In this document: positions 1 to 63,209 of the stretch, piece after piece
Layout: every line of letters starts with the position of its first letter
Numbering within the stretch: the stretch's first letter is position 1
Made by a program: the position numbers and the translations under genes
Source: Caecitellus pseudoparvulus
Lineage: Eukaryota; Protista; Bigyra: Bicosoecida
Reading direction: 5' to 3'
NCBI GenBank assembly: GCA_965644315.1
Contig: CBFFRQ010000057.1
Coordinates: 1 to 64,000, forward strand
DNA: 64,000 nucleotides
The notes under the pieces: model-generated
Told to the model about the DNA's origin: nothing
Databases searched by the model: none
The model's input: the letters and a program-made list of their open reading frames with translations, nothing else

Positions 1-3000
1 AAGCCTGCGCACTGCCGCCTGGCTACCACTGCTGCCTGACTGGCACGCGAAGACGTTGGGGCATGCCTGGATGTTGTCCAGCACCGCCCTGGCCATGGAG
101 TCAGTGCTGTTGCCGCTCCCTGCTTCGGCCTGCAGCGCTGCTTGCAGCTCCTCCAAGGGCCGCACAAGGGCAAAGCCAGGTGCCACGACGAGCTTGCCGT
201 CGCTGCACGTCGCCGATCGAGATGGACAAGGGTGGCACAGTGTCCCACCAGGCACAGCGAAGGAGCCATCGGCACACCGACTGCACACGCCAGCATCGCC
301 ACTTCGCTGCAGGGTGGGCAGGACACTGGCTGTGCCAGGTGGACACGCCACACACCGCACCTGTCGACCCAGCACCACTGCTGGGCGCACCACTTGCCAC
401 TGCACAGTGCGTGACTCCGATGCCGACCACTGCACTGTGTGCAGGGTGTGGTCACTGACGACAGCCGCTGAGCTGGGGCGGACCATGCCTGCCCGACACT
501 CGCACCCCAGACCATCTCCTGTCGCCACGGTGCCGTCAGCAGTGCAGACAGTGCGATGCACATGCAGCGTGGCTGGGCCGCCAGGACCGCCTGACACGAC
601 AGGCAACTGCACAGGACCGACGGCGCCCACCCCAGCCGCCGCTTGCACAGGCTCCAGCACCACCGCTGCCGGGGCCACACCCAGCTCGCCGCCTGATGCT
701 GATGGAGATGCTTGCAGTGTGAGTGCCAGAGACCCTGGCCGGCCTGGCCGCACGTACAGGCCCAGCAGCTGCCCGCCACCCAGCAATGACCCCCACCCAG
801 CCCCCGACTGCGCCTGCTCCCACGCCTGACCCACCGCATCACACCCTCCGCCCGGCACAGCCAAGCGCACTGCATCACGCACAGCGGCACTGGCGCCAGC
901 CGCACTGCACATGCGGCGCAGAGCAGGGAGACCCACAGGCAGCGGCAGGGGCTCCACCCACACGAGCCCTGACGTGGGCACAGCCTCACCCTGCTCCCCG
1001 TGGCCACTGGCCATCACCGTCACGACATCGCCGCCTGCGGGACGTGCCGTGCCGTACCTGTCCCTCAGCACAGCCACGCCCACCAGCACGCCATGTGTCA
1101 AGGCGACCCGGTGCACAGGCAGCGCCGTCACACGGCCCGCCACACCTGCCACCTGCACAGGCACACCACCATCGCCCGGCAGCAGGACTGGCATGTCCTC
1201 CCCCACCACCGATGACACCACCTGCAGCGCCGGCGACGTCGCAGCGTGCACTGCACCCACGCGACGACTGGCACTCACGGCAATGGACCGCACAGACAGG
1301 CTGGCACGGGCCGTCTCCCACACGATGACGTGCAGCACACCAGAGCTGTCTGCCGCTGGCATGGTGTCTGGCGTGTACAGAGCTGTCGCTCGCAGGTGCA
1401 GCTCGCCACCCACCTGCACCAGGGTCACAGACACGCCAGGGGTGGCGTCGGATGCCGCCTCGTGCCACGTGGCCTGCAGGCCCGAGCTGTACACGGCGTC
1501 CTGGCTGCCCGACCACCACGTGGCACGATCACCGCTCACACCTTGCACAGCGGCAGCAAGTGACTGCACGGCAAGCGGCAGGCCAGACACAGCAGCCGCC
1601 GCAGCAGCAGCAGTTGACGCCACCTGGGACACTCCAACACTGGGCCACAGCCAGGCCGCCTGTGGAGCGACACCTGCCCGCAGAGCACCCTGAGCCGGCA
1701 CGACAAGGCTGTCATTCACGGCAGCCACCATGTCCAGCACAGCCTGTGTGCCACTGCTGGCGCCAGTGCAGTTGCTGTCAGCACTGACCTGGACAGCCGG
1801 CACATCTGCCGTGCTGGGCAGGACACCCAGCACCACCACATCCCCATCCCCAGTGTTGGTCAGGGTCAGGTCACCGCCACTGGCGGGGGCGCTGGCAGAC
1901 ACATCGCCCAAGTGCACATACGCAGGACACACACGCAGCGGAGACGCCACCACCTGCACACCCACACGCTGTGTCGGCATCAGGGGGTCGTCGGAGACAA
2001 CCAGCAGTGCCGTGTCGTACACCCCTGCATCCAGCAGTGCCGTGTCCACCTCCACCGACACGCGGGCGATGGAGCCAGCCGCCGCCACACCATGGACTGC
2101 ACATGTCCAGCCAGCCGGCACTGCCACGGAGGCGGGAGGGGCGCAGGAGCCGTCTCCCGCCACAGCGCTGACCTGCATCCAGCACGGCGCAGAGGGCGGC
2201 TGCCACACACTCCACTGCAGTGGGCCGCTGCCCACACTGCGCAGTGACACTTCACGGCTCACAACACTACTGGCCGAGCCGTCGTCGTCATTACCGTGCG
2301 ACCGCACAGCTGCGACCGCGGCCACTTGCAGGGGCGACACCACGCCACGCGGCACGCGCACAGACACGAAGAAGGGCTGCCGCCACATCTCCGCCGTCGT
2401 GGCGCTGTCCAGCACGACCATGTCAAACCAGTACACACCTGGGTCGGGCACACTGCCCCCAGACCCCACTGACACGAGCAGGGTGGCGTCCTCCGACACT
2501 GGCGTGCTGGTGTCCTGACGCATGGTGCCACTGCGAGGCAGCACGTCCGCTGCCAGGGCAGGAGAGCCAGCCGATGGCACTGCAGGCTCCCCACCGGACT
2601 CACGGGCAACCAAGGCAGGGAAGGCTGCCCGCACCACCTGGGTGTCTTGGCTGGTGCTGGCGCCTGCAGCGGCGGAGTGACCCATGTACTCCACCGACAC
2701 ACTCCAGGTCGCACATTGACCAGCTGATCGAATGGACAGGCCTGTGGAGGATGGCGGTGGCACACCCGACCCAGACAAGACCTGCACCACGACAGGAATG
2801 TCACCTGGCACGACATCGAGGTATGTCAGGCCATTCGACGTCGTGTCACGCTCGTCCACGACATCGTCCAGGAGAGGGATGCTTGAGGGTGACATGGAAG
2901 GCGACGGCGGGGCGGGCGACGTGGATGGCGAGTGTGAAGGTGACGGCGACGTGGATGTGGAGGGCGAGGGGGTGGGCGTGTAGGTGGGGGTGGCAGTGGC

Positions 3001-60242: not shown

Positions 60243-61249
60243 ATGCCGTTGCCCGCATACCAGCAGGCCCCCTGGGCTCTGCAGCTCATGTTGAGCCTGT
60301 TGACTACGTTGATGACCCTTCCTTTGTCAATCTTCACGCTGGTCTATGACTTGGTGGCACCCCCCAAGCCTGCTCCCAAAGCCAAGGTCGGCAGCTGCCT
60401 GTCCACACAGCGCCCAAGACAGCCTGGCAGCACTTTGCCCCACGCCACCTCCATGCACAGACCATCCTCATCACTGGGGCCTCCTCTGGCATCGGCCGCG
60501 CCCTCGCCGTCGAGTACGCCGCGCCTGGCGTCACCCTCCTGCTCACTGGGCGCAATGAGGACAGGCTGTCTGGCGTGCAGGCGGACTGCGAGAGCCGGGG
60601 GGCGCAGGTGGTGCTTAAGGCGCTGGACGTGACGGATCGCGCTGCTACGGAGGCGTGGGTGTCGGCGATGGACGGGGAGCACTGCGTGGACATGGTGGTG
60701 GCGAACGCCGGCGTGTCTGGCAGCACTGCTGGCGTGGAGCCGGACGACGTGGCAGACCTCACCCGGAAGGTGTTCGCGGCCAACGTGGACGGCGTGTTCA
60801 ACACCGTCTTGCCGCTGGTGGCGCCCATGAAGGCTCGTGGGGCAGGGCAGATCGTGCTGATGGCATCGCAGGCCAGCTTCGCGCCCATGAATTCGTTCGC
60901 TTACAACGGCAGCAAGGCCGCGGTGCGTTTTTGGGGGGAGGGCCTGCGGCAGGACCTGGCCGCATGGGGTGTGGCTGTGAATGTGGTGTGCCCGGGCTTC
61001 GTGCGGTCGCCCATGACGGACATGAACAGCTTCGCCATGCCAGGCATGGTGGAGATGCCGGAGGCTGTGGAAGCCATTGCAGCCGGGCTCAGCCGCAACG
61101 ACGCCATCATCAGCTTCCCAGCCATCACGTACGTGGCAGCAGGTTTCATGGGGTCACTTTCCGGGACTGTGCGCGATGCTATGGCCCGAGCACGCATCTC
61201 GCCAGCCCTGAAGGCGCGCAAGTCAACCAAACCACGCACAAGCAAGTGA
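60243..61249 (+). CDS. Short-chain dehydrogenase/reductase, copy 2 (tandem paralog)
   Basis: Intron 60387-60460 at the same position as in copy 1; TGASSGIG, NAG, YNGSK, PGFVRSPMT. Confidence 0.92.
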
Positions 61250-61480
61250 ACGTTGGCCGCCCCAATTCACTGCACGGCGCCGCGCCACTTTCAACACACC
61301 CTCAGCTCTTTCATCACACTCCTAGGATAAGCCTAGGACCGCCCCCCTCTGACCCTGAAGGCTTTGTGGGGCTTGTTTGATTCGCGTCTGTGCTCAGCAG
61401 TGCTTGTGTCGCAGCAACCTCAGACAGCAGACATCACGGGCTGTCGGCTTTGAGTTGTGGTCAGGCGAACCCGTAACTTC

Positions 61481-63209
61481 ATGGCCATGCTTCGAATCAA
61501 GAAGATGTTTGTGTCCCGCATCGGGTGCGTTGTGTGCCCGCCCGCGCCCTTGGCTGCAGGGGTGCAGGCTGGCTTGCAGAGCGGCAGGCGCTGAGAAACC
61601 TCACACTGCGGCACTTGTCCCTGCACGTGCACCTTTCAGGAACACAAAGCTTGGGCGTGAGGAAGTGCACAAGCGTCTGGGCGAAGACGCCCAGACAATC
61701 GTGGATTCCATGATGTCCTGCACCGAGAAGTGTGCGTGCTGTGTGTGCGGAGGGTAGCGTTTCGGCTTCCTCATGAGCAGGCCCGCTGCCCGCCCGCAGT
61801 TGCTGGCGAGGAGCTCGCAGACGACTTCAACAAGGACCTTATCAAGCTGGTGCTGAAGGTGGGATTCATGTGGCAGGAGAAGCAGCTGACAGAGGAGGTA
61901 AGCCGCCGTTCCTTTGCCTCTGCAGGGAGTCCAGCTGCCGCCCAGCTGGCCCGTCTTGGATGCCCCCTCCATACTGTTGCCCGTGCAGGACGTGGAGCCA
62001 GCGAGGGACTGCAGCACGAGCCTGGCCCAGACGCTGATGGAGTACTTGTCCCGGCCCCCCGGGGAGATTGACTGCACGGACGTGTGTCACATGATCCACG
62101 AGGTGAAGGATGCCGTTATTCCCATCGTGCAGCCACACATGACTGAGAAGAACTGGAGTAAAATCGGCATTTTGGCGGGGTTCTATGGCTCCCATGAGTT
62201 TGCCTCTTTCTTCCTGAACGATCCAGACGTCGCTGAGGAGCGTGCGGCGTTCCTGAGCGTGCTGCAGACGCAGCTCCCGGAGGCTGCTAGGCGGCAGGTG
62301 TGCTCCGTCGTCGGCTGCTTTCTGCCGCGCTGCACCATGCCCGGCTCCCTGTACTGTTTCCCACACCACGCTGTGAAGTTCCAGGCGCCCCCCACTCTGG
62401 ATGACTTCCTGCGCAACTCGCACTACTGCGCCCTCCTGCGGGAGTGGATGGTCACACAGCAACCCGCCTCCATGCCCCTGCTCGAGTTCTACTTCAAAGC
62501 AGAAGACTACGCCGAGGTACGGTCACGCCAGACACTGGCCGCGCGTGCACCCACCCTATGGCGCAAGTACCTCGCCTCGACAGCTTCCACCCGCGCGCCG
62601 CTGGGAGACTTTGACGGCGACGCAGAGCTGCGAAGCGCCCTGGAAGCCATCAAGGCTGTGTTGGACGGAAGCACGCCGCCGAAAGCCACCCTCTTTGCTG
62701 AAGTGCAAGCCAGGGCGCACGCAGCTCTGGAGGAGGTGTTCCAGGGGCCCTTCAAGGCCAGTGACGCGTATGCTGCGTGGGCGGAGGTGAACACTGGCTT
62801 GCCTCTGCCCCAGGTTCCTGCAACGCGTGCGGCGTTGCTGGAACAGCTGGGAATTTCTCAGGAATCTGCCTATGGCATCCTGGCTGCAGCGCCAGGGACG
62901 GCTTCGGAGGCAGGCGCGACAGCTGCCCCGGCAGCAGCAGCAGGAGGCGAAGCAGGCGCCGGCAGCACGAGCCTGGCGAGCGCCTTCCTCACCACTGCCG
63001 AAAAGGGAGGCACTGGAGCAGATAGCAGTGTATCAGCGACGTATGCTGGGATGGCTTCTACCGCCGACGTGCACATCATGGCTGGGGGGTACTCCGGTGG
63101 CGCTGCGGCTGCTGAAGAGGGTCCGGGGGGGGGCGCCGCTCCCAGTGAACCTGTGTCGGAGGGTGCTGCTTCAAAAGCCCCCACAAGCGCAACCACCTTT
63201 GATGAATGA
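61481..63209 (+). CDS. TNFAIP8/TIPE-like domain + CCCH-type Zn motif + RGS domain fusion protein (~484 aa)
   Basis: Exons 61481-61524, 61640-61731, 61800-61897, 61989-63209. TIPE-like KDLIKLVLKVGFMWQEKQLTEED and IVQPHMTEKNWSKI..FYGSHEF; CSVVGC..YCFPHH; RGS TLDDFLRN..LLEFYFKAEDY..LWRKYL..LFAEVQ..GPFKASDAY. Confidence 0.85.

What the first reader, a model, noticed from the sequence alone, without database searches (positions are those of the whole stretch)
61481..63209. TNFAIP8/TIPE lipid-binding domain fused to an RGS domain
Seen: three introns hide an N-terminal domain that aligns by eye with TNFAIP8 (KDLIKLVLKVGFMWQEKQLTEED vs recalled human KNLIKTVIKLAILYRNNQFNQDE; IVQPHMTEKNWSKI..FYGSHEF vs IIQRHLTAKSHGRV..HFSDCEF), followed by Cx4C..CxxH and an RGS box. 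Knowledge: animal TIPE proteins are stand-alone phosphoinositide-binding/transfer proteins with reported links to G-alpha-i; RGS domains bind G-alpha. Inference: a Rosetta-stone fusion coupling lipid transfer to heterotrimeric G-protein signalling in a protist. The RGS lacks the usual EN and EVN asparagines, so it may be an effector rather than a GAP.
Basis: partly seen in the sequence, partly recalled or inferred. Interest (0 to 1): 0.85.

Follow-up and report, generated by a model that had tools for sequence, protein, structure and literature searches.

The report
TIPE lipid-cavity domain fused to RGS
A real four-exon gene in a probably stramenopile protist joins a TNFAIP8/TIPE lipid-pocket domain, a small zinc knuckle and a non-canonical RGS domain, and belongs to a widespread, undescribed protist family that ties the TIPE fold to heterotrimeric G proteins.

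Summary
Observation confirmed. Window 61481-63209 (+) is an intact 4-exon gene (GT-AG introns) for a 484-aa protein.

- **Domains:** A public model that differs by one residue scores TNFAIP8 PF05527 at 64.9 bits and RGS PF00615 at 29.6 bits, both above cut-off.
- **Fold:** The AlphaFold model (pLDDT above 90 for aa 1-375) matches TIPE3, TIPE2 and TIPE1 (Z about 20), Dictyostelium Gip1 (Z 18.9) and RGS16 (Z 14.8).
- **One gene:** Half of the TIPE domain, the Cys/His knuckle and the RGS lie in one uninterrupted exon.
- **Conservation:** A relative's complete transcript and two orthologous loci keep the same architecture and all three intron positions.
- **Family:** About 60 clusters (50% identity) span both domains. 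Named members are Platysulcus, Mataza, Paulinella and Rhodelphis.
- **RGS residues:** The GAP-critical residues are replaced here and family-wide. The genome's three other RGS loci keep them.
- **Partners:** The genome has two G-alpha genes, one starting MGCGGS.

Best reading: a non-GAP G-alpha-docking module joined to a lipid pocket that holds either a phosphoinositide or a G-protein lipid anchor, as Gip1 does. The function is inferred. No paper describing this architecture was found. I could not obtain RNA reads. The scan noted this stretch twice before.

The parts
61481..61524 (+). Exon 1: start codon and the basic alpha0 helix (aa 1-15; R5, K7, K8, R13).
   Evidence: Translation is found at P0009 positions 1-14. 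K7 and K8 are at least 90% conserved in the family.
61525..61639 (+). Intron 1 (115 nt, GTGCGT..CAG), splitting codon G15.
   Evidence: The position is conserved in orthologous loci L014 and L015.
61640..61731 (+). Exon 2: aa 15-46, the end of TIPE helix alpha0 and helix alpha1.
   Evidence: Translation is found at P0009 positions 16-45. It is 67% identical to the L014 exon.
61732..61799 (+). Intron 2 (68 nt, GTGCGT..CAG), splitting codon F46.
61800..61897 (+). Exon 3: aa 46-78, TIPE helix alpha2, with invariant K65.
   Evidence: Pfam TNFAIP8 21 bits, profile positions 50-79. K65 is invariant in A3.
61898..61988 (+). Intron 3 (91 nt, GTAAGC..CAG), phase 0.
61989..62282 (+). First part of exon 4: C-terminal half of the TIPE domain (aa 79-176), with the PHMxxKN and GS-x-x-F motifs.
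   Evidence: Pfam TNFAIP8 20 bits, profile positions 111-163. Model range 1..178 aligns to TIPE3 at Z 20.9.
62301..62369 (+). Cys/His knuckle C183-x4-C188-x12-C201-x2-H204-H205, a presumed zinc site that links the two domains.
   Evidence: Present in 32 of 58 family members. pLDDT is 87-91. No Pfam family matches it.
62397..62774 (+). RGS-homology domain (aa 215-340) lacking the canonical G-alpha-contact residues.
   Evidence: Pfam RGS 29.6-29.7 bits. Genome search gives the same coordinates. RGS16 Z 14.8, rmsd 1.5 A. Residue mapping.
62793..62879 (+). Conserved post-RGS segment (aa 347-375; LPLP..P..R....EQLG motif), modelled as short helices.
   Evidence: Conserved in P0006, L014 and L015. 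pLDDT is about 90.
62880..63209 (+). Disordered Ala/Gly/Ser-rich tail (aa 376-484) holding one conserved short motif (SLA-x-AFL-x-T), then stop TGA at 63207-63209.
   Evidence: pLDDT is below 50. The motif is seen in P0002-P0008.

Best explanation
The locus is an intact 4-exon gene for a soluble 484-aa signalling protein. In order it has a TIPE/TNFAIP8-homology domain (a basic alpha0 helix plus a six-helix cylinder), a C2CH(H) zinc knuckle, an RGS-homology domain, a short conserved helical segment and a disordered tail. It belongs to a conserved protist family with this architecture.

Most likely mechanism, which is inferred and not shown:
- The RGS-homology domain docks on G-alpha as a binding or effector module. 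It is probably not a catalytic GAP, because the switch-contacting residues are replaced.
- The basic alpha0 helix brings the TIPE domain to anionic membrane.
- The hydrophobic pocket takes up a lipid. This could be a phosphoinositide, as in animal TIPEs, or a lipid anchor of the G protein (the G-gamma prenyl as in Dictyostelium Gip1, or the G-alpha acyl group).
- The protein would thereby tie the G-protein activation state to membrane-cytosol partitioning of the G protein, or to local phosphoinositide handling.

Confidence that the architecture is real is about 0.97. The number given below is for the functional reading.
For: What is shown:
- Gene model and one continuous exon-4 ORF covering TIPE alpha3-alpha6, the knuckle and the RGS.
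- Pfam TNFAIP8 64.9 bits and RGS 29.6 bits on P0009. Exon-wise colinear hits on the window itself.
- AF2 model pLDDT above 90 over aa 1-375.
- Foldseek and VIA-align: TIPE3 Z 20.9, TIPE2 Z 20.3, Gip1 Z 18.9 (rmsd 2.2 A over 159 residues), RGS16 Z 14.8.
- Family TIPE profile against PDB: TIPE3 2.2e-19, TNFAIP8 1.6e-16, Gip1 3.4e-16.
- Family RGS profile against PDB: RGS16 8.7e-18.
- Conservation: 212 representative clusters at E<=1e-3, about 60 of which span both domains in one stretch. Of 58 members, 54 hit TNFAIP8 and 49 hit RGS.
- A relative's complete transcript has the same architecture.
- Orthologous loci keep all three intron positions.
- The RGS4 E87/N88/N128/D163/R167 equivalents are P/L/P/V/P. 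Across the family, Asn occurs in 1 of 54 and 2 of 54 members at the two Asn sites.
- The paralogous RGS loci keep EN and (V/I)N.
- Alpha0 K7 and K8 are at least 90% conserved.
- The genome has two G-alpha loci, one beginning MGCGGS, an N-myristoylation/palmitoylation-type start.
- This is the genome's only TNFAIP8-type locus.

From papers:
- The Gip1 TIPE-like cavity binds the G-gamma geranylgeranyl group and sequesters G proteins (PMC6219514).
- Tnfaip8-PE forms a complex with G-alpha-i3 (PMC5524748).
- The TNFAIP8 alpha0 lysines are needed for PIP2/PIP3 binding (bioRxiv 10.1101/2021.03.26.437243).
Against: - No binding, GAP or lipid assay exists for any member.
- I could not measure the pocket, because the model's coordinates cannot be inspected here.
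- The entrance residues H86/R87 of mouse TNFAIP8 map to W70/Q71, and Gip1 D208 maps to R84. Neither known ligand site is copied exactly (my mapping from the alignments).
- RGS-homology domains without the Asn pair can have partners other than G-alpha (Axin, SNX).
- No G-gamma gene was detected, although that search also rang in no control genome and so is uninformative.
- No RNA reads were obtained for this organism.
Confidence: 0.5

Rival explanations
1. It is a working GAP. The RGS domain accelerates GTP hydrolysis on G-alpha through a non-canonical interface, and the TIPE domain only targets it to phosphoinositide-rich membrane, as DEP, PX or C2 domains do in other RGS proteins.
For: - By sequence and fold the closest solved relatives are R4-type GAPs: RGS16 at 67.9 bits, Z 14.8, rmsd 1.5 A.
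- The basic alpha0 helix is conserved.
- Multidomain RGS proteins with membrane-targeting modules are common (PMC3971589).
Against: - All five mapped G-alpha-contact positions are replaced: P241, L242, P282, V328, P332.
- The two asparagines are absent family-wide.
- Three paralogues in the same genome keep them.
Confidence: 0.15
2. The RGS-homology domain no longer deals with G proteins. It acts as an Axin-, SNX- or AKAP10-like scaffold for some other partner, and the protein is a TIPE lipid-transfer protein carrying an unrelated interaction module.
For: - The canonical G-alpha contacts are lost.
- Axin, SNX13 and SNX25 RGS-homology domains match almost as well: Z 13.4, 14.1 and 11.9.
- RGS domains that lost GAP activity and became scaffolds are known (PMC3971589).
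Against: - Two independent precedents link the TIPE fold itself to heterotrimeric G proteins: Gip1 (PMC6219514) and Tnfaip8 with G-alpha-i3 (PMC5524748). A chance pairing with an RGS fold is therefore less likely.
- The genome retains G-alpha genes.
Confidence: 0.2
3. It is an artefact: two neighbouring genes wrongly joined, a pseudogene, or chance similarity to TNFAIP8.
For: - Each exon alone falls just below the TNFAIP8 cut-off, at 20-21.7 bits against 22.5.
- No RNA reads were obtained for this organism.
Against: - One stop-free ORF carries TIPE helices alpha3-alpha6, the knuckle and the RGS.
- The full-length model scores 64.9 bits.
- Fold Z is about 20.
- A relative's complete transcript has the same architecture.
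- Intron positions are conserved.
- Dozens of full-span homologues exist.
Confidence: 0.02

Closest known systems
Dictyostelium discoideum Gip1 (G protein interacting protein 1; PDB 5Z1N, 5Z39)
   Same: - A TIPE-type six-helix cylinder in a protein dedicated to heterotrimeric G proteins.
- The family TIPE profile hits Gip1 at E 3.4e-16.
- The model aligns at Z 18.9, rmsd 2.2 A over 159 residues.
- In the alignments, the ...N and GS-x-x-F motifs are shared with Gip1 and are not seen in the animal TIPE chains.
   Different: - Gip1 has an N-terminal PH domain and neither an RGS domain nor a zinc knuckle.
- Its partner is G-beta-gamma, through the G-gamma geranylgeranyl group.
- Gip1 D208 maps to R84 here.
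- The strongly conserved alpha0 KK motif lies outside the part of the profile that aligns to Gip1.
Animal TNFAIP8/TIPE1-3 phosphoinositide-transfer proteins (Pfam PF05527; PDB 5JXD, 8GYN, 3F4M, 4Q9V)
   Same: - Pfam family hit at 64.9 bits.
- Fold Z 19-21.
- Basic alpha0 helix with a KK motif.
- Three of the four cavity-floor leucines of TNFAIP8 map to hydrophobic residues (M39, L59, L90) and the fourth maps to A150 (my mapping).
   Different: - Animal TIPEs are stand-alone proteins of about 185-290 aa.
- The entrance residues H86/R87 are W70/Q71 here.
- This protein carries a zinc knuckle, an RGS-homology domain and a long tail.
R4-type RGS GAP domains (RGS16, RGS4, RGS8)
   Same: - Nine-helix RGS fold: RGS16 Z 14.8, rmsd 1.5 A.
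- Profile E 8.7e-18.
- The conserved F..F..S core motif is kept.
   Different: The RGS4 E87, N88, N128, D163 and R167 equivalents are P, L, P, V and P.
Non-GAP RGS-homology domains (GRK2, Axin, SNX13/25)
   Same: An RGS fold without the catalytic asparagine pair. Matches are GRK2 at 58 bits, Axin at 51 bits and SNX13 at 53 bits, with Z 11.8-14.1.
   Different: The domain contexts are unrelated (kinase, DIX, PX). None is joined to a TIPE domain.
Lipid-anchor solubilising factors (RhoGDI, PDE-delta, UNC119)
   Same: A possible functional analogy: a hydrophobic pocket that hides a lipid anchor of a GTPase. PMC6219514 draws this analogy for Gip1.
   Different: These have a different, beta-sandwich fold and no homology. 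The analogy is inference only.

Membership tests
TNFAIP8/TIPE (Pfam PF05527) | Profile match above the curated cut-off (22.5 bits). | tested here: met
   - 64.9 bits on P0009, which differs by one residue from the window's product.
- Window exons alone score 21 and 20 bits, colinear.
- I did not score the window's joined product.
TNFAIP8/TIPE (Pfam PF05527) | Alpha0 helix plus a six-helix cylinder fold. | tested here: met
   AF2 model helices 2-14, 18-28, 30-47, 49-71, 77-98, 108-128, 131-144, 147-155 and 157-173. Z 19-21 to TIPE1, TIPE2, TIPE3 and TNFAIP8.
TNFAIP8/TIPE (Pfam PF05527) | Central hydrophobic cavity occupied by a lipid. | tested here: inconclusive
   Only sequence mapping of four cavity-floor positions was possible (M39, L59, L90, A150). 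The model's coordinates could not be inspected.
TNFAIP8/TIPE (Pfam PF05527) | Phosphoinositide binding and transfer. | not testable with these tools
   The alpha0 KK motif is conserved, but the entrance H/R pair is not. A lipid-binding assay is needed.
RGS domain (Pfam PF00615) | Profile match above the curated cut-off (23.9 bits). | tested here: met
   29.7 bits on window exon 4 and 32.8 bits in the genome search.
RGS domain (Pfam PF00615) | Nine-helix RGS fold. | tested here: met
   RGS16 Z 14.8, rmsd 1.5 A over 119 residues. TM by target is 0.87.
Catalytic (GAP-competent) RGS proteins | Switch-contacting residues equivalent to RGS4 N88 and N128 (also E87, D163, R167). | tested here: not met
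   - The equivalents are L242 and P282 (also P241, V328, P332).
- Family-wide, Asn occurs in 1 of 54 and 2 of 54 members.
- Paralogues in the same genome keep both.
Gip1-type G-protein sequestering factor | TIPE-like cavity domain homologous to Gip1 residues 146-310. | tested here: met
   Profile E 3.4e-16. Z 18.9.
Gip1-type G-protein sequestering factor | N-terminal PH domain. | tested here: not met
   The protein starts directly with alpha0, and Pfam finds no PH domain.
Gip1-type G-protein sequestering factor | Binding of the G-gamma geranylgeranyl group and cytosolic sequestration of the G protein. | not testable with these tools
   Pull-down and competition assays as in PMC6219514 are needed.

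The most novel reading that the evidence does not exclude
The TIPE-RGS family is a two-handed solubilising and shuttling factor for heterotrimeric G proteins. The RGS-homology domain recognises G-alpha, while the TIPE pocket hides the G-gamma prenyl or G-alpha acyl anchor. Taken with Gip1 and the TNFAIP8/G-alpha-i link, this would mean that the ancestral job of the TIPE fold was handling lipidated G proteins, and that phosphoinositide transfer in animals came later.
Probability: 0.2. Interest if true: 0.8.

Novelty: new variant of a known kind. Interest (0 to 1): 0.6.

Why it matters
TIPE proteins are studied almost entirely in animals, as regulators of immunity, cancer and chemotaxis. One paper states that single-celled organisms have only the weakly related Gip1 (PMC7170861).

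This locus shows a true TNFAIP8-family domain in protists, permanently joined to an RGS fold. It belongs to a family with named members in several major eukaryote lineages.

Such a conserved fusion is independent genomic evidence that the TIPE fold and heterotrimeric G proteins work together. Until now that link rested on Dictyostelium Gip1 and on a few mammalian TNFAIP8/G-alpha-i reports.

The family gives a compact natural construct for testing what the pocket carries (a phosphoinositide or a G-protein lipid anchor), and for testing how an RGS fold without the GAP asparagines engages G-alpha.

Tried and rejected
- **Haemoglobin hits:** PDB phmmer gave weak haemoglobin alpha matches (E 0.008) to the KNWSKIG..GFYGS stretch. 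I rejected these as chance, because the fold and profile searches give TIPE.
- **Profile-word search with A1:** this returned only 9 proteins, all but one already in hand.
- **ESM Atlas search:** only generic RGS clusters at lead-level scores.
- **Pfam on the Cys/His knuckle and on the tail:** nothing significant. CFC, CxC6 and Zf_WRKY19 scored far below cut-off, and there was no GoLoco hit.
- **G-gamma (PF00631) search of the genome:** blank, but it also rang in no control genome, so it is uninformative.
- **Literature:**
  - No paper holds TNFAIP8 or DUF758 together with an RGS fusion.
  - The TSA prefix GECG was not found.
  - Anantharaman et al. 2011 (PMC3396428), the main survey of RGS architectures, is not held. 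Prior mention there cannot be excluded.
  - The supplements of PMC3971589 are not held.
- **Organism name:**
  - The best named G-alpha relatives are only about 59% identical (Platysulcus, Albugo, Bolidomonas).
  - No LHC genes were found.
  - I conclude only 'probable heterotrophic stramenopile'.
- **Joining the exons:** Full-length analyses used the public protein P0009 by reference.
Full report
**What is in the sequence**

The region reads as a GC-rich (about 62%) eukaryotic gene on the + strand. The model has four exons:
- Exon 1: 61481-61524.
- Exon 2: 61640-61731.
- Exon 3: 61800-61897.
- Exon 4: 61989-63209.

The three introns are 115, 68 and 91 nt. All are GT-AG (GTGCGT, GTGCGT and GTAAGC donors; CAG acceptors). 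Two codons are split and give G15 and F46. Intron 3 is phase 0.

Each exon was searched by reference.

A public 484-aa protein came back from the cluster look-up: P0009 = CAE7859499.1, labelled 'TNFAIP8L3 [Symbiodinium sp. KB8]'. It contains the exon 1-3 translations at positions 1-14, 16-45 and 47-78, with G and F at the junctions. It differs from the window's exon 4 by a single residue. An independent annotation therefore reached the same model, and P0009 served as the referenced full-length sequence.

**Domain identification**

Exon by exon, Pfam gives colinear TNFAIP8 pieces. Exon 3 scores 21 bits at profile positions 50-79. Exon 4 scores 20 bits at profile positions 111-163. Exon 4 also scores RGS 29.7 bits, above the 23.9 cut-off.

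On P0009, TNFAIP8 scores 64.9 bits (E 1.1e-17, aa 3-159, cut-off 22.5) and RGS scores 29.6 bits (aa 215-340).

An AlphaFold2 model of P0009, built with a 58-sequence alignment, has pLDDT above 90 for nearly all of aa 1-375 and a disordered tail at aa 376-484.

| Match | Z | Detail |
|---|---|---|
| TIPE3 | 20.9 | model range 1..178 |
| TIPE2 | 20.3 | |
| TIPE1 | 19.8 | |
| TNFAIP8 | 19.1 | |
| Dictyostelium Gip1 | 18.9 | rmsd 2.2 A over 159 residues |
| RGS16 | 14.8 | rmsd 1.5 A, model range 214..346 |

Foldseek agrees. TM by target is 0.70-0.84 for the TIPEs, 0.75 for Gip1 and 0.82-0.87 for RGS16.

**One gene, not two**

The C-terminal half of the TIPE domain, the Cys/His cluster and the whole RGS domain lie in one stop-free ORF, exon 4. 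Their union needs no splicing.

Three relatives support the model:
- A complete transcript-derived protein from a relative (P0006, EukProt entry GECG01007514.1, 470 aa, 44% identical) has both Pfam domains. It matches the window across all three junctions.
- Orthologous genomic locus L014 (GC 61%) encodes the same protein and keeps all three intron positions, with one extra intron.
- Orthologous locus L015/L016 (GC 44%) does the same, with two extra introns.

**A family, not a one-off**

An exhaustive phmmer search of aa 1-345 against 1.84 billion representatives found 212 proteins at E<=1e-3 and 85 at E<=1e-10. By my count from the table, about 60 of the best 150 align in one stretch across both domains.

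Of 58 members scanned, 54 hit TNFAIP8 and 49 hit RGS.

Members that carry a species name:
- Platysulcus tardus (stramenopile)
- Mataza sp. D1 (Rhizaria)
- Paulinella micropora (Rhizaria)
- Rhodelphis marinus

Several of these are transcriptomes of predators, so prey contamination cannot be excluded for single entries.

**The Cys/His cluster**

The cluster is C183-x4-C188-x12-C201-x2-H204-H205 (window 62301-62369). It is present in 32 of 58 members and cleanly absent in 26, which defines two subfamilies. It matches no Pfam family. I take it as a small structural zinc knuckle in the linker. This is inferred.

**The RGS domain is not a canonical GAP**

Alignment to RGS5 and of the family profile to RGS16 maps the RGS4 contact residues as follows:

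| RGS4 residue | E87 | N88 | N128 | D163 | R167 |
|---|---|---|---|---|---|
| Here | P241 | L242 | P282 | V328 | P332 |

Across 54 family members, Asn occurs once at the N88 site and twice at the N128 site.

The genome's three other RGS loci serve as an internal control. Two are on C69 and one is on C80. All three keep both motifs, reading AENV..KQVN, AENV..AQIN and RENV..RMVN.

**The TIPE domain**

A profile of the family's TIPE parts hits solved structures as follows:

| Structure | E-value |
|---|---|
| TIPE3 | 2.2e-19 |
| TNFAIP8 | 1.6e-16 |
| Gip1 | 3.4e-16 |
| TIPE2 | 7.6e-15 |
| TIPE1 | 3.6e-14 |

The domain is therefore about as close to Gip1 as to the animal proteins.

The alpha0 helix is strongly basic (R5, K7, K8, R13, K18, R21). 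K7 and K8 are at least 90% conserved, and K65 is invariant.

In TNFAIP8, the alpha0 lysines K17, K18, K22 and K26 and the entrance residues H76, R77 and K93 are needed for PIP2/PIP3 binding (bioRxiv 10.1101/2021.03.26.437243). My mapping from the alignments gives:
- The KK pair and the K93 equivalent (R84) are kept.
- The H/R pair is W70/Q71.
- The cavity-floor leucines map to M39, L59, L90 and A150.

**Context in the genome**

- G000 is 30.6 Mb in 215 contigs.
- It has two G-alpha loci about 12 kb apart on C18.
- One G-alpha gene begins MGCGGSK, which fits the N-myristoylation/palmitoylation pattern of G-alpha-i-type subunits (the pattern itself is established knowledge).
- This is the only TNFAIP8-type locus in the genome.
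- No light-harvesting-complex genes were found.
- The best named G-alpha relatives are stramenopiles, at about 59% identity.

High GC, GT-AG introns and the small genome do not fit a Symbiodinium nuclear genome (my knowledge). The NCBI label probably marks a contaminant contig.

**Mechanism**

Three lines of published work bear on it:
- Gip1 uses its TIPE-like cavity to hold the geranylgeranyl group of G-gamma and so keeps G proteins in the cytosol (PMC6219514).
- Mouse Tnfaip8 loaded with phosphatidylethanolamine forms a complex with G-alpha-i3 (PMC5524748).
- Animal TIPEs carry PIP2/PIP3 and steer chemotaxis downstream of GPCRs (PMC7170861).

A conserved covalent union of this fold with an RGS fold fits a protein in which one domain recognises G-alpha and the other handles a lipid at the same membrane site. 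I rate the options as follows:
- A non-GAP, G-alpha-docking reading with a lipid-pocket partner: about 0.5.
- A membrane-targeted true GAP: 0.15.
- A scaffold unrelated to G-alpha: 0.2.

Which lipid the pocket holds remains open.

**Novelty**

Full-text searches found no paper that describes a TNFAIP8/DUF758 plus RGS architecture. PMC7170861 states that TIPE proteins are conserved in animals and that Dictyostelium has only the weakly related Gip1.

The gene is present in public databases under an automatic name, and Pfam hits for both domains are precomputed for a homologue. The sequence is therefore known but the architecture is undescribed. Anantharaman et al. 2011, a survey of RGS architectures, could not be read.

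The scan had noted this same stretch twice before.

**Limits**

There are no reads for this organism.
- No multimer prediction or cavity measurement was possible.
- The G-gamma search was uninformative.

Noticed in passing
window 61481-63209; P0009: The public protein CAE7859499.1 is labelled Symbiodinium sp. KB8 and sits on a 2.8-kb contig. The window's genome is 30.6 Mb, about 62-64% GC, uses GT-AG introns and has no LHC genes. The NCBI record is probably a contaminant from a heterotrophic, stramenopile-like protist.
   Followed up: partly
window 62793-62879 and about 63190 upstream region (aa 347-375 and aa 402-412): Two short motifs outside any Pfam domain are conserved down to relatives at 44% identity. 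One is LPLP..P..R....EQLG, just after the RGS domain. The other is SLA-x-AFL-x-T, inside the otherwise disordered Ala/Gly-rich tail. They may be docking motifs.
   Followed up: no
G000 contig C18, 259.6-260.9 kb (+) and 272.8-274.0 kb (-); loci L001-L006: Two G-alpha genes lie about 12 kb apart in opposite orientation. The first begins MGCGGSK, an N-myristoylation/palmitoylation-type start.
   Followed up: partly
L009 (C69), L010 (C69), L012/L013 (C80): The three other RGS loci keep the canonical EN and (V/I)N GAP motifs. One lies in an open frame of about 1800 aa and one in an open frame of about 1000 aa, so they are large multidomain RGS proteins.
   Followed up: partly
alignment A1 (58 family members): The family splits cleanly into members with the C-x4-C-x12/13-C-x2-H-H knuckle (32) and members with a short linker lacking it (26). 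About a third of members carry Asn one residue before the canonical RGS4 N88 position.
   Followed up: partly
L014 3262-4918; L015 3048-4891: The orthologues keep the window's three intron positions but have one (L014) or two (L015) extra introns inside what is exon 4 here. This means intron loss in the window's lineage or intron gain in the others.
   Followed up: no
window 61250-61480: Only about 230 bp separate the stop codon of the upstream SDR gene (61247-61249) from the start codon of this gene. The promoter and 5' UTR must be very compact.
   Followed up: no
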